64,000 nucleotides of DNA from Thecamonas trahens ATCC 50062 (GCF_000142905.1 NW_013657663.1:1-64000), one strand, 5' to 3'; shown: positions 51,329-62,363, counted from the stretch's first letter. The notes: generated from the sequence alone by a model not told the origin. Numbers and translations: made by a program.

Positions 51329-52464
51329 ATGAAGCGCGGCCGCCCGTCCACGACGACGTCGACAACACTTGCGCTTGCCCCTGTGAGCAAGCGGAGCAAG
51401 GGCTTGTCGTCCGGAGAGGGCTCGACAGCACTGGCGACGACGGTGGAGCGGACGTCGTCGCTGGCGGCTGCCAACCTGGTCCTCTCGGGCCATGACGACG
51501 AGGTCACCTGCGTGGCCTTTGCCGGCAACGGACGGACACTGTACTCGGGATCAAAGGACCGCTCGGTCATTGTCTGGCCTGTCTACTCGGACACCATCTG
51601 CTCCATCGGTCATCTCCGTGGCCACTCGTCGGCCGTCACGGGCCTCGCCTGCCCCTCCTCTACTGCTGCCGCTGGCTTTGATCTGGCTACCTGCTCTGCA
51701 GATGGCTCGCTGCGGACGTGGGATGTGGCGAGTGAGACGTGCGAGGTCATTGCTCGTCTTGACGACATTGTTAACGATGTGGCGGTTCTGGACAACTCCT
51801 CGCTCCTGGCCGTCGTCACCGACGGCGGCGTGCTCACTGTCCGCGATGCACGCTCGCGCGCTGCCGTCTTCTCAGTCTCGCTCTCATCGCCGCTGACTGC
51901 CACGGCGCTTGCCAACGAGGCTGATGGCCCCGCCGTGTACGCTGCCGGCATCGACGGCGTCGTCCGCAAGTACTCGCTGGCGGCGACCTCCGACGCCGCG
52001 CCTGTGCCGCTGCTGGAGCTTGCGCCGCGCGTCCGCGCTCCGCCGCCGCTCTCGGCCTTGGCTCTAGCACCCTCGGGTGACGCCCTCCTCACCCGCGACC
52101 TCGACGGCCTTGTCCGCGTCTGGGACATCCGGCCCTTTGCCCCGCCCATCCGCGAGCTGCGCGGCTTCACCGGCCCTCACGGGCCCGAGGCCAACCCCGA
52201 GATGCGACCGCTCCCGCTCGCCCTCGCGCCCAACGCCTGGCTCGACGCCGCCACCCGCGCCACCCACGCCACCCTTGCTCTCGGCGGCTCGCTCCACGGC
52301 TCGCTCTACGCCTGGCACTCGGGCTCTGGCGAGCCTATTTACGAGCTTCCTGGCCACACTGGCCCGGTCCTCTCCATCGCCTGCTCCCCCCTGAGCCCAT
52401 CATCGCCACTGGCGCTGCCGACAACACCATTGTCCTCGGCGAGATCGACGCCTCTGTCTTGTAA
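51329..52464 (+). CDS. SNRNP40: U5 snRNP 40 kDa WD40 protein-like (frameshift at ~52390)
   Basis: RTSSL....VLSGH.DEV, VRVWDIRPFAP, YELPGHTG.V. Adding one C gives EPIIATGAADNTIVLGEI and a stop at 52462-52464. Confidence 0.8.
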
Positions 52465-52477
52465 CACCCCCTCCCCC

Positions 52478-52577
52478 NNNNNNNNNNNNNNNNNNNNNNN
52501 NNNNNNNNNNNNNNNNNNNNNNNNNNNNNNNNNNNNNNNNNNNNNNNNNNNNNNNNNNNNNNNNNNNNNNNNNNNNN
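52478..52577. other. Assembly gap (100 N)
   Basis: N run; causes the false read-through ORF 51329-54508. Confidence 1.
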
Positions 52578-52594: not shown

Positions 52595-55500
52595 ATGGAC
52601 TCTGACGGGGCGACATACCTCCAGCTTGTGTCTGCCAACAACGCAGAGGCCAGCGTCTATGCTACCTTTGCCACCTTTGAAGAGGCCGTCTATGACGCCC
52701 TGCCGACCTACACCGACACATGGGAGCAGCTGGTGGTGACATCCACAAAGACCAAGACACTCGCGCTGAGCAAAGAAGATCGGAAGCGGGCAAGTGCTTC
52801 ACCACCGCAACCATGGAATCGTCTACCCATTGCTCTCTCTTCTATGTCTGATCTCAAAGTCCTCATCCTCGCCCACAATGCCTTCTCATCGCTTCCTCCT
52901 GATCTTGGCCTCCTCTCGAACCTGCTCTACCTCGACATGGCGCACAACGTCATAGACTCGGTCTCGGCTTCGGTTCTTTGCTCTTGTTCCGCGCTGCAGA
53001 CTCTCTCGCTTGCTGGTAACAAGCTCACCGCTTTTCCAGACCTCTCATCCGTCTCCTCCCTCACATCGCTCAATCTCTCCGGCAACGCCATCAACGCCAT
53101 CTCGGCTTCCGGCCCGCTCATCCCCCACTCTCTGCGCATCCTGGACCTCGCTGCAAACGGGTTGAAGAAGATCTCTGGTACCTTTCTGGCCCACCACGGC
53201 TCGCTCACCTCGCTCTCGCTGGCGAACAACCCCAAGCTCAAGGCTCTGCCCGCCCTCTCCTTCCGCTTTGCCGTCTCGTCCCTCCGCAACCTCGACCTCT
53301 CCACCACCGCTGTCTCATGGCTCCCTGCTCCGGTCTGTGCCCGCCTCCGCAAGCTTGAGACGCTCAACCTCCTCGACACCGCAGTCGCACACCTCCCGCC
53401 ACAGTTTGACTCGCTCGTCCGCCTTCACACCATCTCGGCGCTCAACTTCACCCTCTCCGCCGACTCGGGCCTCGACGTCAAGGGCTCGCTCCATCATTTT
53501 TTCCGCCTCTGTGGCCAGACCGCTCTTCCGCTCTTCCGCTCCGCTTTTGCTGACCTTCTCCTCACCCACGAGCCGAACACCTACGATGTCATCCGCGCCG
53601 GCGCCGCCCCGCGCTACCTCGATCTTCTCCGCTCTGATGTTTCGGCCCTTGTCGAGTCCGCCATCAACGTCCTCTCCAAGCTCCTCTCCTCCGAGCACAA
53701 CAAAGCCGAGCTCCTCTGTGCCGGCCTCATCGAGGCCCTCGGCCCGGTCCTCGCCACCGCGCCCACTGAACTTGTCGAGCTCGCCACTTCGGGCCTCGTC
53801 AAGCTCTGCACGTTTTCCACCCCTACGTCAAGGTCCTCTTTGCCGAGCACGGCGGCACCCGCCTCCTCGCCTCGCTCTCCACCTCGGACATCCCATCAGT
53901 TGCTCGCTTTGCCGCTGACGCCCTCTCCGCTCTCGCCGTCCAGATCCCAGCCGCAGGCATGCTCCAGGTCCGCGTCCTCGAGGCCATGCAGCTCGTCGAC
54001 CCGTCGACCGGCAAGTCGCCGTCGTCGGCCTACGCCGTCCTTCGCGTCGGCACCGAGAAAACGACCACAGAGGCCCGCAAGGCTCCCGACGGCGCCCCGG
54101 CCTGGTCGCGCAACGCCCAGCTCAATGTCGGCATTGCCGACGCCATGGGCCGCATCATCACCGTCAAGCTCTACAACCGCCGCACCCTTCGCAAGGACGT
54201 CTTCCTCGGCTCGGCCCGCCTCCCGGTCCTCACCTTTCTCGACGGCGCCGTCGTCGACAACTGGTTCCAGCTCCGCCCGCCCGACTCGCGCGTCTCGTCC
54301 GAAGCCGCGCTTACTGGATACGTCCACATGCAGATCCAGTTCACCTCACAGGCCTCCTCCTACTTTGAGAACATGGCCCAGAACGCCCGCGTCTGGGCCT
54401 TCCCCCCGACATCCTCAAGCGCCTCGCATCGTCGGAAGCCGCCCCGTCACCTTCGCCGCTCCCGGCCCCGGCCCTTCCGATCATCGTCGTCAACGGGACA
54501 CCCGGTAGCGCGCCCTCGCCCGCCCTCGACGCGCCCGCCATACACCCGGAGCCTGCCACCTACTCCTCCATGCTCGATGCGCTCGACGGCGATGCTCGTC
54601 TCTACGAGATCCTAACCCTTGGCCTCGACGCCTCGTGCGCCGTCTACTTTGACTCGGACACAGACGCCTTTCTTCACCGCGAGGCCTTTACCAAGGTGCA
54701 GTACACCAACCGCCACTCGGAGCAAAAGTACTTTTACGCCACCCGCAGAAGACCGGAGGCCACCGCAGTTGACCTCTATGTCTCTTTCATGGGCACCTAC
54801 TCGCTTGCAGACGCCGCCATCGACTTTAATGTCCTTGCCCACGATGCCCTCAACGGCCGCATCCACGCCGGCTTTGCCCAGCGCGCCTACGCCATTCCGC
54901 TCCTGCCACTCCTCGAGTTCCTCCGCCCGCCATCCACCACCGCCGCCGCCCGTCGCGGTGCCCTCGTCCTCTGCGGCCACTCGCTTGGCGGTGCTGTCGC
55001 CGTCATTGTCTTTCTTCGGCTCATTGTCGAGTGCTCCATCACGCCCGACGAGCTCCGCCGCATCCACGTCGTCACTGTCGGCCAGCCGCTTGTGGGCGAC
55101 ACCGCGCTCGCCGCCTACGTCCATGCCCTCGGCGTCCACACCCGCATTCACGCGATCGTCAACCACGGCGACTCGGTCGCGTGCTTCTCCTCGGCCTCGC
55201 CGCGCATCATTGCCCAGAACCTCATCCGCCACGCCAAGGACGCCACCGTTGCCAAACTCCGTCAGCTGGCGCAAGAACGTGCCGCATCGTCGCCGTCGGC
55301 CGACGAACCGCCGTCTCCCGCCGCCGCCTCAGAGTCGGACGCTCTCAACGCGCTCATGACCTCGCCGTCGTCGGTCGCCGTCGACGTCCTCACACACTAC
55401 ATCGCTGCCCGCTCCACAGACGTCTTCTTTGACTTTACCCCCTTTGGCATTTCGTACATGATCGAGCACCCCGCTGCCCACGAGGGCACCGCCCGCTACG

Positions 55501-58403
55501 ACGGCGCTGACTTTACCGTCACCGTCGCCTCCGATCCAGCTGTCGTCAAGCGCTGGCTCGACATGCCACCCGAGGGCCTCTCCACCTACAACCTTGACCA
55601 GCACAAGTTGTACTACTACTTTCAGAACTGGGAGGGCCTCGGCCCGCCGCCGTCCGCAACGCCAGACCTACTCTCCTTCCCGCTCCACTCGCTCGCCTCT
55701 TACTCGGAACGCTACGGCGGCTTTGGCGACGACGGCCTCGCTCTCTCGGTCGAGACCCGCGACGAGCCGGTTTCCTACGCCGAGGTCTCCGACGTTGTCG
55801 ACGTCTCCAACTCGGCCGATCTCGCTGTCGACCTGGCTTCGGAACTTGTCTCGGACCTCGGCACCCCGTCGCCGAGCCCAGGCCCGCGCCCCACCTCCGA
55901 CACTGCGTCGGGTGGGGGCGCAGGTGCCGGCAGTGGGAGTGAGCCGAGCGGCAGCGCGCCGCTCATCCACCTCACCACCTCGTGGGCGCCGGTCATCTCG
56001 TCGTCGCACGCCGTCTTTGACTCGCGGACCGCCTCCATCGAGGTCATCCTCTTTGGCCGCTCGCTCCTCTTTGTCTCGCGCCTCAAGTTCCGCGGCGACG
56101 ACTTTGACTACGAGCCAGTCTTTCTTACCGACACCGAGCTCCGGTTCCGGCTCCGCTGGCTTCCGGCCGTGTACGGAAAGGAGGAGACTGCCGCGACGTC
56201 GGACGGCAGTGGACTGTCGGCCAGCGAGTCAGGAGGAAGATCCGCCGAGGTGGCGGCGTCTATGGGAGACAAGGCCTCTACCCGTCCCGGCTCATCGTCG
56301 GAAGCCGCCGCCGCCGCCTCGCTCGAGGCCGCCGTCAAGCTCGGCTCGTACGAGTCGCTCACTCTGCGCGTCATCTCGCACTTTGGTGAATCGCGGGTCA
56401 AGCTCAACCTGGCCCAGCATGCCAAGTCGATGTCGCGCGTCGCGCGGGTTGCGCGCAAGTTCTGGGTCGAGGAGCAGCGCCGCGCCGCCCGCGCCTCCAA
56501 GCTCATGGCCGCGCTCCCGCCCGCCGCCCGCGCCTCGCTTCCGTCGCACTGGACCAACCCGGGCGCGGTCTTTGCCATCTCATGGCAGGGCCTCACCAAC
56601 GCGCTTGCCTCGGTAGCGTCGACCATCGAGCACACTGACCTCGTCGAGTCGCTCGCCTCGGCCTACCTCACCTCGTCAGCTTTCCAGGAGTACCTGGCCG
56701 AGTCGGGCGATGTGCAGCTTCAGTTCTCGCACTTTGCCGTCCGCTCCATCTCGTTCCCGGCGCCGCGGGTCGCCATGGACGCTCTGCACAACAAGGTCGG
56801 CGTGGCGCTGGCGGGTATTGCCATCGAGCTCGAGGCCGCCTTCTCGGTTGTCCGCCTCACACAGTTCCTCTCGTACACCAACGTCGGTGTCACCGTCTCG
56901 ATCTCGGACGTCGGCGGCAGTCTCGAGCTTAATGTTGTCGAGACCGCTGACGACGTTCTCTCGCGCGCCGCTGAGGCCGACGACGGCTCGGACGACGGAG
57001 AACTCCTCACCGAGGATCTGGTGGCTGTCATGGCGCCGCCGGCCTCGTTTGCGCTCCGCATTGGCAAGCTCGACGTCGACTTTGGCCTCGAGCTCACCGA
57101 CGACAAGGGCGAGGTCCTCGCTTCCAAGGACAACTGGGGCTTTTCCGGCTTTGTCCTCTCGCAGTTCTCCGGCTACATCAAGTCGTCCATCTCCAAGGCG
57201 CTCGACTCGGTCCCGATCGAGGCTGCGCTCATCTCCGAGCTCACCCGGGTCTTCCTCGAGGGCAAGCCTGGAACTCACATCCCGCTCGCCGGCTCGGCCT
57301 CGGTCCTCACTGCAGACTACTCGCTTGTTCGCGCACCGCCTCTCAAGCGCGAGGCTGCGTCGTCGATGCTCTGCACCGGCCATCGCGGCCTGGTGCGGAC
57401 GTACGGTCCCAACGTCCCACCCGAGCACTACGCGGACATCCCGCCGCCGCGGCCGATGGATGCCGCGCTCTCGATGTCGAATCTCCACGACGCGGTCGTC
57501 GCCCTCTCGCCGGCCATGGTCACCTCGGTTCTGCTCGCTGGCTGGCACGCCGGCTTTTTCGCGCTCGACGTCGCTGCCTCTGACCTGCCCGACTCGCTCG
57601 CCGACCCAGAGCTCTTTGCACACTACGCTTCCGACGCGCCGCCGGACACACCGTTCCACCTTGCAGTGGCAGTCACATCGCCGCCATCGGTCGTCTTTGA
57701 CAGTGACCATGGCATCTGCCTCTGTCTGCACGCCGACTTTACTCTTCTCTCCGGTGATGGCGACGGCACTGCACACGAGCCGGTCCACACCGAGCCGTTT
57801 GTGATCGATGTGAGCCTGGACCCGACTGCACTTGCGCTTGGTGATGACGGCCTCGCCGGCGCGAGCATCGAGATCCGGCCGTCGGACGGTGTCGCCGAGT
57901 TTGATGCCGGTCTCGGTCCGGTAGCGGCCGTCGTCCGCCAGTTCCGGACCGAAATCCATGACTTTCTCGTCCTTGCCTACTCCTCGCGGCTGCTGAGCCT
58001 TGTCGTCGATTGGCTCCGAGCCTCGCCGCTCCTTCTCCTCGATTCGGTCAAGCGAGTGGTGGCGCAGTCACAGGCCGAGGTTGCGCTCTTCCCCGACGCG
58101 CTTGTCATCTCGTTTGTGGTTCCCGAGTACGTCCTCGACGAGCGCGAGGTTGCCGCCGTCGTCGCCACCACCCGCGACCTCCTCGGCTGGGGCACTTCGT
58201 TCCCCCTCCTCAACGCCACCGCGTCACGCAAAGGCAACGACAGTGGAGACGATGCCGCGTCGCCATCACCGCCTCGCGACGATTTTGCCATGGATTCGTT
58301 CCTCAACCGATTCGGCGCCTGGCTCGAGCGCCACGTCCTCGTCCATCGGCACGGCGACGGCGGCGGTCTTCCTCAGGGCAGCCTCTCGCAGCCGGTGTCC
58401 TGA
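52595..58403 (+). CDS. Multidomain LRR - ARM - C2 - class 3 lipase - IPT-like - BPI/LBP (TULIP) protein (frameshifts at ~53815 and ~54405)
   Basis: LRRs ~52810-53440; ARM-like helices ~53560-53940; C2 LQVRVLEA...DVFLGSARLP...NWFQL; lipase SFMGT, IHAGF, GHSLGG, VTVGQP.VGD, VNHGD; BPI-like DYSLV.AP, ALS..MVTS.L.A...AG, PPSV.F. Confidence 0.75.
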
Positions 58404-58462: not shown

Positions 58463-61400
58463 TCAGCCACTGGCACCGGCAGGTGCCTCGACCTCGCGGC
58501 CGCAGACCACGGCGTACTGCGAGGCCCACTTGCCGGCGGCGACCGAGGCCTCAAATGCGCGCCACTTGCCGGACGAGTCCGCGGCGAGGGCGAGCGGGTG
58601 GAGTGTGTGGATGGTGCGGAGAGTGGCGTTGATGAGGGCGGCAAAGGCGTCGACGTCCTTGGCGGCCTTGCTCCACGGGCGGTCCTTGAGGGTCTTGGTA
58701 AAGGCCTTGATGAGAGCATCGACCACTTCGAGGAGCGCTGCAGGGACGAGGCTGGCGAGCTCGGTGAGAATGGTGTGGCAGAGGATGGCGTTGTCGGTGA
58801 GCCGGTCGCCAAACCCGGCCATGAGCTTGGGCACCAGCTCGTGGACGTTGATCTTGTCGAGCGCGACGAGGACAAGAACGTGGAAGCACTCGAGCGCGGC
58901 CTTGCGGTTGAGCTCGGCGTCGTCGACCTTAACGGTCATGATGCCGAGCTTGAGCTCGCGGATAAGCTCCTTCTTGACCGGCAGCTCGTCGTAAAGCTGC
59001 GGGAGGAGGTCCGGGACGAGGTCGCAGACCAGCGCCGGGGCGCGGTTGATAAAGAACGTGAAGGTCTTGACCGCCAGCCGGCGGACTTCGACAGACGGGT
59101 CGGCGATGAGCGCAAAGAAGGTCGGGAGAAACGGCGCAAGCGCGGCGTCGGCGCCCGATGCTGCGAGCACCGACTTGAGGGCCGAGACCGCGCCGCCACG
59201 GACATGCGCCTGCTCCGAGGCGACAAGCTCGGCCAGCGCCGGCGCCATGTCGGCCATATTCGATGCAACCAGAAGGCCGAGGCACTCGGAGGCCACGTTA
59301 CGGGTTCCAACCTCGTCCGACGCCGCCGAGGCCACGAGAACTGGCCAGAGGCTTGTCTTGACACCAGCGAGCGCGTTGCTTGAAGGGATCTTAAGCGCCG
59401 TGTCGACAAACTCCTTAAAGGCGGTGAGGACAAGGAACTGGGTCTGTCCACTCGCGCCGTCCATGACCTCAAACATGCGCGGGAGATACGCGTCCGGCGC
59501 CGAGACTGCGAGCTTCCCGAGCGCGTACGCGCCAGCAGCCTTGATCCGCTCCGACTCGGCGTCAAAGACGCTCATGGCTGCGCGTGCGAGCTCATCCTTG
59601 GCCGAAGCGGTCGAGTGGCGGACGCCAATCTGGCCGAGGACGTAGAGCGCAAGGACACGCGAGGCCTCACTCCCATTCCCGTCACCAGCAACAGTAGCAA
59701 ACTGCGCGAGGTGACTCTCGATGGCGGCCGCAGCGTTGAGGACACCGGCGATGGCAGTCGCCAGCGAGGTGTATGCCTGCCGCGGGAGCGGCGAGTCACC
59801 GTCGGTCCCGCACGCGACAAGAGCATCGACAACAGCATCAACGCCTACTGCAGACTTGGCCACCGCCGCCTCTAGGAGCTGGACCAGGACCTGCAGCGAG
59901 GCACCCTGGACCACCGCGGTCGAGAGGAGCGCCATAACGGGCTGGGAGACAAGGCGATACAGCTGCGCCGCGACTTGCGCAGAAGCGCCGTCGACCAGAG
60001 CCACCAGCAGGTCGGCAGCAAGGGTGGCGAGGCCGAGATCGGCCTCGGAGACAAGCGCAGCGGCCTCGGTGCCGAGCGCGACGACCGTCGAGTCGTTAAA
60101 GGTCGCCGGCGCAAAGGCAACCATGGCCTTGGTGGTGGTGAGTGCAGCTGCCACGAGCGCACGGTCCGACTTGCGGAGGAAGCCGGTAAGCTCGTCTTGG
60201 AGGACCGAGGCCGCAGCGCTGACGTCAAAGACGCCGGCAGCCGCCGGGGCACTGAACACGGTGCCGAGAGCCGAGACGGCGGCGACGCGGACGTCAAGCA
60301 GCGCGTTCTGGACAGACGCCACAAAGAGCGGCAGCGCGTCGCCCACCCGCGAGCTGCCGAGCGTGTGCGCGGCGGCAGCGACGGTGGCGCCCAGCGCGGC
60401 AAGCCCGTGTGTCTTGACGTGACGGTCCGACTCGCCCTTGAGCGCTGCAATGGTGCCGTCGAGCACAGCCTCGAGGTTGTCGGCGGCCGGCGGGTCAGCG
60501 GCGAGGACTGCAACGAGCAGCTCGAGAACCTGCAGCCCACCCGAGATGATCTTGAAGTTCGAGTCGGAGAGGAGCGGGAGGATGGCGGCAATGAGATGGG
60601 CGCGGAACGGAACAAAGGCGGTTGGACCTGCGTTCGCGAGGAGCGAGCGGAGGACGGTGCAGACGTCGACCCGGAGCGCGTTGGCGTCGGCGTCGGCCTC
60701 ATTGAGGACCTTGACGAGGCGCGGGACAAAGAGCGGGAGCGTCGACTCGAGCTCGTTGGGCAGGACGGTGGCAAGCTGGAGAACCACCGCGACAGCGGCC
60801 TCGCGGGCGCGCGGCGACTTGGTCAGCTGCGGTGCGAGCGACTTGGCCACCGCCGGGAGCGCAGCGACAAGGAGACTGAGCGAGGCCGAGTCCGATGACG
60901 AAGCGCCGCGCTGCGAGACGTTGGCGGTCGTCTTGACAAGTGTGACAAAGGCGGCAAAGACATCGGCCTTGACTGCGTCCTGCCGTTCCTTGAACCGCTT
61001 GACAAGAACTGGACAGATGACCGAGTAAAAGTGCGGGAGCATCGAAGGCCGGGTCTCAACCATGGCGGCGAGGCACTTGGCCGACGCCTTGCGGACCTTC
61101 CACGAGATGTCCTCGTCGTCGGACATGTCATCGTCGTCGTACTCGTCGTACTCGTCATAGTCAGAGTCCTCGTCCGACGGATTCTCATCGTCGTCGTCAT
61201 CGTCCTGGTAGTTGGGGTCAAACGCGATGAACGCCACGCACGCCTCAATGATCGTGTCGAGGTGGATGGCGACGGCGGCCGGGCAGCGGCGGACCAGTGC
61301 AGTGTAGAGCCGGATGACCGCGTCAGTGACTTCGACGGCGAGCATGTCGTGGTCGCGACCAACCGGGTCGACGACAAGGCGCTTCGAGAGCTGGATGATG

Positions 61401-62146
61401 TCACCAAGTCGCTGGGCAACCCGCGGGCCGACAGTGTCAGTCACGGCCGCGAGACAGGCCACCAGCGTCTTCCGCTTGGTGCCCGAGGCGCCGTTGTCCG
61501 CGAGCGTGTCGACGAGGTAGTCGAAGAGGTGCGAGAAGAGGTCAGGCGAGAGCGAGGCAGTCAGATAGCCAATCGAGGTCACGGTATGCTTCCGCACCGT
61601 CTCCCGCGTCGCATCCGTGAGGCTCAGCAGGGCGTCGAGCAGAACTTTGTGGGCGTCGACGACGCGGGCGCAAAACTTGGCGAGGACGGCCGAGGTGACT
61701 TCCAGCGCACGGATGTTGACGTCCGAGTTGCTGGAGCGGAGGCCTTGGACCAGTGGGCCGATGGCCAGCTCACATACAAGCGTTGCATCCGGCGAGTCGA
61801 TAGCCAGCTCGGTGACAATGACCGAGAGGCCCATGGCCGAGACATCACGAAGCTCTTCCTTCTCCGAGAGCATGTTGGAGGTGAGGGCGGGAATGAGCGA
61901 TCGGACAGCATTGGTTCCATAGACCTTGACCAGAAGCGGGAAGACATCCACAGCAAGGGCGCGGACATCACGCGACGAGTCGCCGAGAAGACGGACAGTG
62001 CCATTGACGAGGTGACTGGCGTCGGAAGGCCTGCAGGGAAAGCCATCGCTTTCCAGCTCGCGCTTGAGGTCAGACACAGCCATGTACCGCAGGTCGTGGT
62101 CGTCGTTCTCCATACGGGTCACCATGTTGGACGAAAACGTGGACAT
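58463..62146 (-). CDS. CAND1: Cullin-associated NEDD8-dissociated protein 1 (HEAT repeats, TIP120 domain)
   Basis: DHDLRYMAVSDL, FDPNY(D)n..SDDEDISWKVRKASAKCL, RFKER...VKADVF, RNVASECLG, KKELIRELKLG....KVDD..LNRKAALEC. Confidence 0.93.
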   Translation of the reverse strand: MSTFSSNMVTRMENDDHDLRYMAVSDLKRELESDGFPCRPSDASHLVNGTVRLLGDSSRDVRALAVDVFPLLVKVYGTNAVRSLIPALTSNMLSEKEELRDVSAMGLSVIVTELAIDSPDATLVCELAIGPLVQGLRSSNSDVNIRALEVTSAVLAKFCARVVDAHKVLLDALLSLTDATRETVRKHTVTSIGYLTASLSPDLFSHLFDYLVDTLADNGASGTKRKTLVACLAAVTDTVGPRVAQRLGDIIQLSKRLVVDPVGRDHDMLAVEVTDAVIRLYTALVRRCPAAVAIHLDTIIEACVAFIAFDPNYQDDDDDDENPSDEDSDYDEYDEYDDDDMSDDEDISWKVRKASAKCLAAMVETRPSMLPHFYSVICPVLVKRFKERQDAVKADVFAAFVTLVKTTANVSQRGASSSDSASLSLLVAALPAVAKSLAPQLTKSPRAREAAVAVVLQLATVLPNELESTLPLFVPRLVKVLNEADADANALRVDVCTVLRSLLANAGPTAFVPFRAHLIAAILPLLSDSNFKIISGGLQVLELLVAVLAADPPAADNLEAVLDGTIAALKGESDRHVKTHGLAALGATVAAAAHTLGSSRVGDALPLFVASVQNALLDVRVAAVSALGTVFSAPAAAGVFDVSAAASVLQDELTGFLRKSDRALVAAALTTTKAMVAFAPATFNDSTVVALGTEAAALVSEADLGLATLAADLLVALVDGASAQVAAQLYRLVSQPVMALLSTAVVQGASLQVLVQLLEAAVAKSAVGVDAVVDALVACGTDGDSPLPRQAYTSLATAIAGVLNAAAAIESHLAQFATVAGDGNGSEASRVLALYVLGQIGVRHSTASAKDELARAAMSVFDAESERIKAAGAYALGKLAVSAPDAYLPRMFEVMDGASGQTQFLVLTAFKEFVDTALKIPSSNALAGVKTSLWPVLVASAASDEVGTRNVASECLGLLVASNMADMAPALAELVASEQAHVRGGAVSALKSVLAASGADAALAPFLPTFFALIADPSVEVRRLAVKTFTFFINRAPALVCDLVPDLLPQLYDELPVKKELIRELKLGIMTVKVDDAELNRKAALECFHVLVLVALDKINVHELVPKLMAGFGDRLTDNAILCHTILTELASLVPAALLEVVDALIKAFTKTLKDRPWSKAAKDVDAFAALINATLRTIHTLHPLALAADSSGKWRAFEASVAAGKWASQYAVVCGREVEAPAGASG

Positions 62147-62363
62147 GGTGGGCGAGGCGTTCCGCAGCGTAGAGACGTGTGGCAACGATACCCGTGGTTG
62201 GGCGACCTGTTGGCGAGGAGGGTGAAAGGAATAGTGGGTGAGGGGGATGGGGGGTGGGGGGTGGGGGGTGGGACAAAAATTGCTGGCGACAAAGACCGTG
62301 GCTGTGGCTTGGCCAAGGGAGAGGACATCAATAACTTTATGGACTTAGCTAGTGTGGTGCGAG

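What the first reader, a model, noticed from the sequence alone, without database searches (positions are those of the whole stretch)
52595..58403. Unreported-looking LRR-ARM-C2-lipase-IPT-BPI/LBP fusion: a candidate intracellular lipid sensor, hydrolase and transfer machine
Seen in sequence: correcting two one-base homopolymer deficits (ttttcc ~53815; ttcccccc ~54405) gives one ~1,930-aa frame. It contains LRRs, ARM-like helices, a C2 domain, a class 3 lipase with intact GHSLGG nucleophile plus candidate Asp (VNHGD) and His (DQHK), an IPT-like beta segment (~55985-56160) and a two-lobed BPI/LBP-like region (~56560-58130). No signal peptide or TM segment is visible. Established: BPI/LBP (TULIP) folds bind LPS and lipids and are usually secreted; C2 domains target membranes; LRRs are recognition modules; the plant immune regulators EDS1/PAD4 have lipase-3-like domains. 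Inference: this is a membrane-recruited protein, perhaps at the phagosome of a bacterivore, that recognises, cleaves and extracts bacterial lipids or signals on them. I do not know this architecture from any characterised protein.
Basis: partly seen in the sequence, partly recalled or inferred. Interest (0 to 1): 0.85.

Follow-up and report, generated by a model that had tools for sequence, protein, structure and literature searches.

The report
Cytosolic lipase fused to BPI-like lipid carrier
The flagellate Thecamonas trahens encodes one 1,936-residue cytosol-type protein that joins a leucine-rich-repeat scaffold, a C2 membrane-docking domain, an apparently active class 3 lipase and a complete BPI/CETP-like two-lobed lipid-carrying module, a combination I found described nowhere, in a fold family that a 2017 review reports only outside cells.

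Summary
The window is Thecamonas trahens ATCC 50062, and the gene is AMSG_04138, annotated as uncharacterized.

**One gene, not three.** Contigs from four other sequencing runs carry one extra C behind 53819 and one behind 54397. Both frame breaks are therefore assembly undercalls, and the gene is a single ORF of 1,936 aa (52595-58403). The NCBI model hides the breaks with two false mini-introns.

**Domains.**
- Pfam confirms LRR, C2 and Lipase_3.
- The Ser-Asp-His triad is conserved across the family.
- Only weak sequence hits and a helical model support the ARM-like stretch.
- The last ~800 aa have no Pfam hit. An AlphaFold2 model matches full-length BPI (Z 18.6, 410 of 456 residues) and CETP (Z 15.5), far above all other folds. 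An Ig-like, IPT-type sandwich precedes it.
- A profile-profile comparison and language-model neighbours agree with the BPI-like call.

**Location.** There is no signal peptide or transmembrane segment. An ortholog has a stop three codons upstream of the same start.

**Distribution.** The family is tiny: two Thecamonas paralogs, a few marine-metagenome relatives and one Rhodelphis marinus transcript.

**Function.** The architecture is solid and unreported. The scan's follow-up on the paralog, on other DNA, reached the same architecture.

The parts
52595..58403 (+). Whole gene (AMSG_04138). One ORF of 1,936 aa once two missing C bases are allowed for.
   Evidence: Frames. Identity to P0001. Extra C in contigs from other runs. 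Length arithmetic.
52595..52825 (+). N-terminal ~75 aa: a small beta-beta-alpha-beta unit capping the LRR. No signal peptide.
   Evidence: Ortholog model. The ortholog has the same start, with a stop three codons upstream. Hydropathy scan.
52826..53464 (+). Leucine-rich repeat solenoid, closest to SHOC2.
   Evidence: Pfam LRR_8 E 8e-20 and LRR_4 E 2e-18. Ortholog model against SHOC2: Z 22, rmsd 2.6 A, 223 aligned, 24% identity.
53468..53955 (+). ARM-like helical repeat of about 10 helices, crossing the first frame break.
   Evidence: Arm 18.9 bits against a cut-off of 20.6, and ARM_PUB E 9e-3. ARM_ARMC5 E 0.047 in the ortholog. Helices 278-429 in the ortholog model.
53820..53823 (+). Assembly error 1: C-run one base short.
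   Evidence: Extra C behind 53819 in X6 and X8. The ortholog is continuous here.
53956..54273 (+). C2 domain lacking the loop-3 acidic cluster.
   Evidence: Pfam C2 E 1.2e-12, 48.4 bits. In the alignment to C2 chain 9zk0, the window has NRRTLRK where the reference has DEDKGSS.
54398..54399 (+). Assembly error 2: C-run one base short.
   Evidence: Extra C behind 54397 in X4, X6 and X7. The ortholog is continuous here.
54780..55620 (+). Class 3 lipase. Ser codon 54981-54983 (GHSLGG), Asp 55170-55172 (VNHGD), His 55602-55604 (DQHK), with a ~140-aa insert between Asp and His.
   Evidence: Lipase_3 E 2.2e-14, 54 bits. The match to Rhizomucor lipase ends at query 255 and chain 203, the catalytic Asp by my own knowledge. 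The triad is conserved in the paralog, P0002 and Rhodelphis P0010.
55983..56426 (+). Ig-like, IPT/TIG-type beta-sandwich, split by a disordered insert (56169-56345) that the paralog lacks.
   Evidence: Model residues 7-154 against Bacteroides SGBP Ig-like domains (Z 8.3-8.7) and IPT/TIG domains of EBF, MET, plexin, NFAT and Sec5 (Z 6.5-7.5), rmsd 2.3-3 A, 73-86 aligned. No Pfam TIG hit.
56553..58130 (+). Complete two-lobed BPI/CETP/LBP-like double TULIP module. Lobe 1 is about 56553-57365 and lobe 2 about 57366-58130.
   Evidence: Foldseek: BPI 1ewf E 8e-17, CETP 6e-15, LBP 8e-15. VIA: 1bp1 Z 18.6, 410 of 456 aligned, and CETP Z 15.5; the next fold scores 9.0. hhalign against the canonical Thecamonas BPI genes: prob 65%, E 6e-5, 388 columns. 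Atlas neighbours are LBP_BPI_CETP clusters, score 0.94.
58290..58337 (+). Conserved C-terminal helix with an invariant-looking Trp, after a disordered tail.
   Evidence: Helix 776-791 in the model. Conserved across the window copy, the paralog, P0002 and P0009, and partly in P0010.

Best explanation
Shown: this is one cytosol-type protein of 1,936 aa. Its domain order is an N-terminal cap, a SHOC2-like LRR, an ARM-like helical repeat, a C2 domain, a class 3 lipase with a conserved Ser-Asp-His triad, an Ig-like (IPT-type) sandwich, a complete BPI/CETP-like double TULIP module and a conserved C-terminal helix.

Inferred: it works as a membrane-recruited lipid-remodelling enzyme. The C2 domain lacks the usual calcium-binding acidic cluster and carries basic residues there instead, so it would dock on the cytosolic leaflet of an anionic membrane. 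The lipase would cleave an acyl ester of a glycerolipid. The tethered double TULIP would lift substrate out of the bilayer, or carry the hydrophobic products away, possibly to a second membrane at a contact site. The LRR and ARM scaffold would receive the regulatory or targeting protein partner. The paralog adds an EF-hand for calcium input.

I put the architecture at more than 0.9. The confidence figure below is for the coupled dock, cleave and carry mechanism.
For: - **Single ORF:**
- **Domains:** Pfam, lipase alignment to solved lipases, triad conserved in four divergent members.
- **Double TULIP:** Foldseek E 8e-17 to BPI. VIA gives Z 18.6 and 16.3 to BPI and 15.5 to CETP over the whole chain, well clear of the next fold at 9.0, both with and without Foldseek preselection. 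hhalign against the canonical secreted BPI genes of the same genome gives E 6e-5 over 388 columns. The profile against PDB sequences ranks LBP and BPI first, though not significantly. P0009 has a weak LBP_BPI_CETP_C hit. Language-model neighbours all belong to LBP_BPI_CETP clusters.
- **Cytosolic:** no hydrophobic N-terminus or transmembrane segment. The ortholog has a stop three codons before the same start, and no signal-like exon in its 200-bp intergenic region. The paralog carries an N-terminal EF-hand. The canonical Thecamonas BPI genes do have signal peptides.
- **Same order elsewhere:** an uninterrupted paralog ORF, Tara Oceans contigs and a Rhodelphis transcript.
- **Precedent for TULIP plus C2 acting on cytosolic leaflets:** E-Syt and TMEM24 (PMC5507252).
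Against: - No lipid binding, lipase activity, localisation or expression data exist for this protein, and no RNA run holding the gene was found.
- The C-terminal model has only moderate confidence (pLDDT 60, pTM 0.53, 9-row alignment).
- The Pfam BPI models do not reach threshold, and the hhalign probability is 65%.
- Whether the lipase and the TULIP act on the same lipid is pure inference.
- One metagenomic fragment (P0009) has Gly where the catalytic His should be.
- The calcium independence of the C2 rests on one pairwise alignment.
Confidence: 0.5

Rival explanations
1. One reading: an innate-immunity-like sensor and effector that is recruited to phagosomes, recognises bacterial lipids or LPS through its LRR and BPI-like parts, and cleaves and extracts them.
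For: BPI and LBP are among the top structural matches. LRRs are present. By my own knowledge, Thecamonas feeds on bacteria. Canonical BPI family genes exist in the same genome, so the fold was available to be co-opted.
Against: The protein is cytosolic, so it cannot meet lumenal prey lipids unless membranes are breached. CETP, a neutral-lipid carrier, matches about as well as BPI (Z 15.5 against 16.3). The best LRR match is the intracellular scaffold SHOC2, though extracellular LRR receptors score within 2-3 Z units. Identity to BPI is only about 14%, and no LPS-binding feature was tested. The same architecture occurs in Rhodelphis marinus, which by my own knowledge is a predatory flagellate.
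Confidence: 0.12
2. The lipase domain is a non-catalytic scaffold, as in EDS1/PAD4, and the protein is purely a regulated lipid-transfer or tethering protein.
For: There is a large ~140-aa insert between the Asp and the His. One metagenomic fragment lacks the His. The His could not be aligned to a solved lipase.
Against: GHSLG[GA], the Asp and the [DE]QHKL His motif are kept in both Thecamonas paralogs, the Tara ortholog and Rhodelphis, despite only 25-30% overall identity. Lipase_3 scores 54 bits against a cut-off of 22.
Confidence: 0.12
3. The BPI-like call is an artefact of a low-confidence model, and the C-terminal ~530 aa are some other alpha/beta fold.
For: Mean pLDDT is 60 and the alignment is shallow. 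The window copy has no Pfam hit. The PDB profile E-values are 0.24-0.5.
Against: Four largely separate lines converge on the same family: fold searches with two aligners, hhalign, a weak Pfam hit in two relatives and language-model neighbours. The match covers all of BPI in register and stands 6-7 Z units above the next fold.
Confidence: 0.05
4. The frame breaks are real, so the locus is a pseudogene or two to three separate genes.
For: The reference assembly carries the breaks as deposited, and the NCBI model needed two mini-introns to bridge them.
Against: Four other runs, at least three of them metagenomes, carry the extra C at each site they cover. The ortholog and the paralog are uninterrupted. 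A third C-run break of the same kind sits in the neighbouring WD40 gene, which points to a systematic assembly error.
Confidence: 0.02

Closest known systems
BPI / LBP / CETP family (Pfam PF01273 and PF02886)
   Same: A two-lobed double TULIP fold aligned over the whole of BPI (Z 18.6, 410 of 456 residues) and CETP (Z 15.5). A colinear profile-profile match to the canonical Thecamonas members.
   Different: No signal peptide. The module sits at the C-terminus of a 1,936-aa cytosolic multidomain protein. Identity is about 14%, and the Pfam models do not reach threshold. [quoted passage not shown]
Intracellular BPI-near TULIP proteins such as S. pombe SPAC32A11.02c (PMC5507252)
   Same: Intracellular, with the TULIP near the C-terminus of a long protein. 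Found in fungi, protists and amoebae.
   Different: Those proteins have a single TULIP and a helical N-terminal region. This one has a full double TULIP plus a lipase, a C2 domain and an LRR.
Extended synaptotagmins and TMEM24 (SMP plus C2)
   Same: A cytosolic-face TULIP combined with C2 membrane docking. This is the nearest functional logic.
   Different: Those use single SMP TULIPs that dimerise, are membrane-anchored, and have no hydrolase or LRR. SMP matches to this model are weak (Z 5.9-6.9).
TUPA/TUPAL proteins (PqiA plus BPI-like, bioRxiv 10.64898/2026.09.11.750981)
   Same: Protist fusions of BPI-like TULIPs, some of them doublets, with another lipid-handling module. They have been proposed to act together with a lipase.
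   Different: In those the TULIP faces the lumen and the partner is a transmembrane PqiA domain. Here the protein is soluble and cytosolic, and the partner is a covalently fused lipase.
Class 3 lipases (Rhizomucor and Rhizopus lipases; uncharacterized plant Lipase_3 proteins of ~1,025 aa)
   Same: A Lipase_3 core with the GHSLGG nucleophile elbow and an aligned catalytic Asp. The plant proteins are the closest outside lipases (39% identity over ~100 aa).
   Different: The only similarity found to those proteins is in the lipase core. This one has a ~140-aa insert before the His.
AMSG_05413, the Thecamonas paralog (scan note s1-748565)
   Same: The same domain order in one uninterrupted ORF. 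About 28% identity across the lipase-to-C-terminal piece and 29% over the last 812 aa.
   Different: It has an N-terminal EF-hand pair and lacks the disordered insert in the IPT-like domain.

Membership tests
BPI/LBP/CETP (double TULIP) | Two tandem TULIP lobes forming one elongated module | tested here: met
   Model residues 197-722 align to BPI residues 1-456 (Z 18.6, 410 aligned) and to CETP 7-476 (Z 15.5). Foldseek E 8e-17.
BPI/LBP/CETP (double TULIP) | A match to Pfam PF01273 or PF02886 above the gathering score | tested here: not met
   The window copy has no hit at E<=0.1. The genome-wide scan with both models finds only three other genes above threshold and misses this one. The best hit in a relative is 18.6 bits against a cut-off of 23.
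BPI/LBP/CETP (double TULIP) | Sequence homology detectable by profile-profile comparison | tested here: inconclusive
   hhalign prob 64.8%, E 6.2e-5, 388 colinear columns, but from shallow alignments of 5 and 2 rows.
BPI/LBP/CETP (double TULIP) | Secretion signal and extracellular location | tested here: not met
   No hydrophobic N-terminus. The ortholog has a stop three codons upstream of the same start. The canonical Thecamonas BPI genes do have signals.
BPI/LBP/CETP (double TULIP) | Binds lipid in apolar pockets | not testable with these tools
   This needs purified protein or a high-confidence structure.
Lipase_3 (class 3 lipase) | Pfam PF01764 above the gathering score | tested here: met
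   54 bits against a cut-off of 22, E 2.2e-14.
Lipase_3 (class 3 lipase) | GxSxG nucleophile and catalytic Asp | tested here: met
   GHSLGG aligns to the nucleophile elbow of 6a0w and 1lgy. The match to 3tgl ends at Asp255 and chain position 203. Both residues are conserved in four members.
Lipase_3 (class 3 lipase) | Catalytic His | tested here: inconclusive
   The [DE]QHKL motif is conserved in the window copy, the paralog, P0002 and Rhodelphis, but no alignment to a solved lipase covers it. The P0009 fragment has Gly there.
C2 domain | Pfam PF00168 above the gathering score | tested here: met
   48.4 bits against a cut-off of 22.
C2 domain | Calcium-binding acidic cluster in loops 1 and 3 | tested here: not met
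   Loop 3 reads NRRTLRK where the aligned C2 chain 9zk0 has DEDKGSS. Based on one pairwise alignment only.
Armadillo repeat | Pfam Arm above the gathering score | tested here: not met
   18.9 bits against a cut-off of 20.6. Only single weak ARM-family hits appear among relatives. The ortholog model shows about 10 stacked helices, so this is a helical repeat of unassigned type.
IPT/TIG domain | E-set Ig-like sandwich matching IPT/TIG structures | tested here: inconclusive
   Z 6.5-7.5 against EBF, MET, plexin, NFAT and Sec5 IPT domains, rmsd 2.4-3 A. Bacteroides SGBP Ig-like domains score higher (Z 8.3-8.7), and Z values in this range are common. No Pfam TIG hit.

The most novel reading that the evidence does not exclude
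This would be the first full BPI/CETP-type double TULIP that works inside the cytosol. It is covalently coupled to an active lipase, making a self-contained machine that docks on a membrane, extracts a lipid, cleaves it and carries it off, under the control of an LRR/ARM scaffold. That would show that BPI-type carriers are not inherently extracellular, and that lipid transfer and lipolysis can be hard-wired into one chain.
Probability: 0.35. Interest if true: 0.7.

Novelty: new variant of a known kind. Interest (0 to 1): 0.6.

Why it matters
The standard review of lipid-transfer proteins (PMC5507252) describes the BPI/LBP/CETP family as exclusively extracellular. The intracellular TULIPs it describes are SMP domains or single-TULIP proteins near the BPI family.

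Here a complete BPI-like module sits in a cytosol-type protein, directly fused to a lipase with an intact triad and to a C2 domain. The arrangement is conserved between apusomonad-like lineages and a Rhodelphis transcript.

If the parts cooperate, this is a natural example of lipid extraction coupled to hydrolysis in one polypeptide. It would be useful for asking how lipases obtain substrates from bilayers and how TULIP carriers are loaded.

It also corrects a public gene model, which drops 22 residues through two false introns.

The limits are real. The family is tiny, the organisms are not genetically tractable, and every functional statement is inference.

Tried and rejected
- **Pfam on the last ~850 aa:** no hit.
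- **Single-sequence HMMER of the C-terminal 812 aa against 1.84 billion representatives:** only 6 hits.
- **Word-indexed searches:** the Rhodelphis C-terminus found only itself. A C-terminal profile, A5, returned only P0001 and P0002, missing even the known paralog. That blank therefore reflects the prefilter and not absence.
- **Atlas:** the first call, with a window reference, failed because the machine was busy. It was repeated with P0001.
- **Plant ~1,025-aa Lipase_3 proteins and EukProt P0003:** tested for a shared C-terminus. Only the lipase core matches.
- **RNA evidence:** no RNA run holds the gene, so expression in Thecamonas remains unshown. The only transcript-level support is the Rhodelphis transcriptome entry.
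- **Paper searches:** the locus tags and the Pfam pair Lipase_3 plus LBP_BPI_CETP returned nothing.
- **ARM region:** not resolved by fold search, because LRR matches filled the list.
- **Hidden signal-peptide exon:** rejected for the ortholog. It cannot be read directly in the window because of the 100-N gap at 52478-52577.
- **Joining the frames:** the three frame pieces were always searched separately by reference. The N-terminal model is of the uninterrupted ortholog (L007), not of the window copy.

Full report
**Identity and frame**

The window is 65% G+C eukaryotic DNA. A search with the lipase-bearing piece returned a 100% match to AMSG_04138 of Thecamonas trahens ATCC 50062. That entry is a 1,914-aa protein that NCBI calls uncharacterized and UniRef calls C2 domain-containing.

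In the window, coding sequence runs in frame 1 from the ATG at 52595. It continues in frame 0 from about 53820, and in frame 2 from about 54400 to the stop at 58401-58403.

I laid contigs from four other runs on 53500-54700: three marine or estuary metagenomes and one 2020 run of the organism. All were at least 99% identical to the window. X6 and X8 carry one extra C behind 53819. X4, X6 and X7 carry one extra C behind 54397. No run that covers either site lacks the extra base.

The assembly is therefore one C short in the runs 53820-53823 and 54398-54399. The true ORF is 1,937 codons.

The ortholog P0002 reads straight through both places with matching residues. The NCBI model skips them with two small false introns and loses 22 residues.

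The three frame pieces were searched separately by reference throughout. I built no joined sequence.

**Domains with sequence support**

| Domain | Pfam result |
|---|---|
| LRR_8 | E 8e-20 |
| LRR_4 | E 2e-18 |
| C2 | E 1.2e-12 |
| Lipase_3 | E 2.2e-14 |
| Arm | 18.9 bits, below the 20.6 cut-off |

- **Lipase.** It aligns to the Rhizopus and Rhizomucor lipases. GHSLGG falls on the nucleophile elbow. The match ends at Asp255, opposite chain position 203 of 3tgl, which is the catalytic Asp by my own knowledge.
- **Triad conservation.** The Ser, the Asp and a [DE]QHKL histidine motif are conserved in the window protein, its paralog, the Tara ortholog and a Rhodelphis homolog. These share only 25-30% identity overall.
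- **C2.** It aligns to a solved C2 domain but carries NRRTLRK where that domain has its acidic loop-3 cluster. A calcium-independent, basic membrane-binding surface is therefore likely. This is an inference.

**N-terminal half**

I modelled the uninterrupted ortholog (L007:2397-4316; pLDDT 73.6). The model shows a small cap, an LRR solenoid, about ten stacked helices and a C2 sandwich.

The LRR matches SHOC2 best (Z 22, rmsd 2.6 A, 24% identity). The cytosolic scaffolds RSU1 and SDS22 also match, and extracellular LRR receptors such as LGR4/5, GPIb-alpha and VLR score within 2-3 Z units.

The ARM label remains weak. Single sub-threshold hits to three different ARM models appear in two orthologs. 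I call this stretch an ARM-like helical repeat.

**C-terminal 812 aa**

This part has no Pfam hit. HMMER of it against 1.84 billion representative proteins found only six proteins:
- itself;
- the paralog AMSG_05413;
- a 2,295-aa Rhodelphis marinus transcriptome protein;
- three metagenomic entries.

A nine-row alignment gave an AlphaFold2 model with pLDDT 60 and pTM 0.53.

| Search | Result |
|---|---|
| Foldseek against the PDB | BPI first (E 8e-17), then CETP and LBP, then only other TULIP proteins (OrfX/P47, Mdm12, SPLUNC1, Der f 7, JHBP, E-Syt2, TMEM24) |
| VIA second look | Model residues 197-722 align to BPI 1-456 with Z 18.6 (410 residues) |
| VIA against 48,161 representatives, independent of Foldseek | BPI Z 16.3 and CETP Z 15.5; the next fold scores 9.0 |

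Further lines agree with the BPI-like call:
- The family profile ranks LBP and BPI first among PDB sequences, though not significantly (E 0.24-0.5).
- Two relatives give weak LBP_BPI_CETP_C hits.
- hhalign of the family module against the two canonical BPI genes of the same genome gives 65% probability and E 6e-5 over 388 colinear columns.
- The ten nearest language-model clusters that carry a Pfam family all share a family or clan with the top LBP_BPI_CETP hit.

Model residues 7-154 form an Ig-like sandwich. It matches Bacteroides SGBP Ig-like domains (Z 8.3-8.7) and many IPT/TIG domains (Z 6.5-7.5) with low rmsd. That makes IPT-like a fair description but not a proof of membership.

A conserved helix with a Trp follows the TULIP module.

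**Topology**

- The N-terminus is hydrophilic.
- No 19-residue window reaches transmembrane-like hydropathy outside the buried lipase core strand.
- The Tara ortholog starts at the same residues, with an in-frame stop three codons upstream. It has a 200-bp intergenic region with no signal-like frame.
- The paralog begins with an EF-hand pair.
- By contrast, the genome's canonical BPI family genes (on C49, C54 and C10) open with hydrophobic signal sequences.

The 100-N gap 18 bp upstream of the ATG cannot be read, so this conclusion rests on the ortholog.

**Distribution and context**

The same domain order occurs in three other places:
- an uninterrupted paralog ORF;
- Tara Oceans contigs, with different neighbours;
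- a Rhodelphis transcript, which is the only transcript-level evidence that the fusion is expressed as one chain.

The neighbours in the window are a WD40 gene and CAND1, which gives no functional context.

The scan's follow-up on the paralog (note s1-748565) reached the same architecture on other DNA.

**Comparison with the literature**

[quoted passage not shown] It says the nearest intracellular relatives have a single TULIP (PMC5507252).

A 2026 preprint describes protist fusions of BPI-like domains with PqiA, facing the lumen. It mentions an unknown lipase only as a possible partner.

Searches for the locus tags or for the domain pair found nothing.

**Verdict**

I favour a mechanism in which the C2 docks the protein on a membrane, the lipase cleaves a lipid, and the tethered double TULIP carries substrate or product. 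This is inference from domain logic, and I give it about 0.5.

I give it about 0.12.

I class the finding as a new variant of a known kind, with interest 0.6.

Noticed in passing
window 52384-52389: The upstream WD40 gene (51329-52464) also changes frame at a C-run. The last blade and the stop (…EPIIATGAADNTIVLGEIDASVL*) read in frame 0 after CTCCCCCCTGAG. This looks like a third homopolymer undercall of the same kind.
   Followed up: partly
G000:C49:263391-264677 (L009), C54:51530-52816 (L010), C10:142037-143404 (L011): The genome holds three canonical BPI/LBP/CETP genes above the Pfam thresholds. The two ORFs I read (on C49 and C10) open with N-terminal signal-like sequences. The C49 and C54 copies give near-identical scores and may be an assembly or recent duplicate.
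   Followed up: partly
window 53704, 54324, 54452: Marine and estuary metagenome contigs at least 99% identical to T. trahens differ at three bases. The T>G change at 54452 is shared by three runs and is synonymous. The species, or a very close strain, is therefore present in several environmental data sets.
   Followed up: no
window 58290-58337: A C-terminal helix with an invariant-looking Trp follows the TULIP module, after a disordered tail. It could be a membrane-binding helix or a plug for the lipid tunnel.
   Followed up: no
L008:199-3228 (P0009): This metagenomic relative starts inside the post-lipase region at a contig end. It has Gly where the family's catalytic His motif sits (LEQG against LDQH). 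It is also the member with the best Pfam LBP_BPI_CETP_C hit (E 1.3e-3).
   Followed up: partly
L006:903-7154 (AMSG_05413): The paralog's annotated protein carries an N-terminal EF-hand pair that the window copy lacks. An N gap lies inside the 5' part of its ORF in the assembly.
   Followed up: partly
window 58466-62185 (-): The downstream gene on the minus strand is a CAND1/TIP120 homolog (TIP120 E 1e-30).
   Followed up: no
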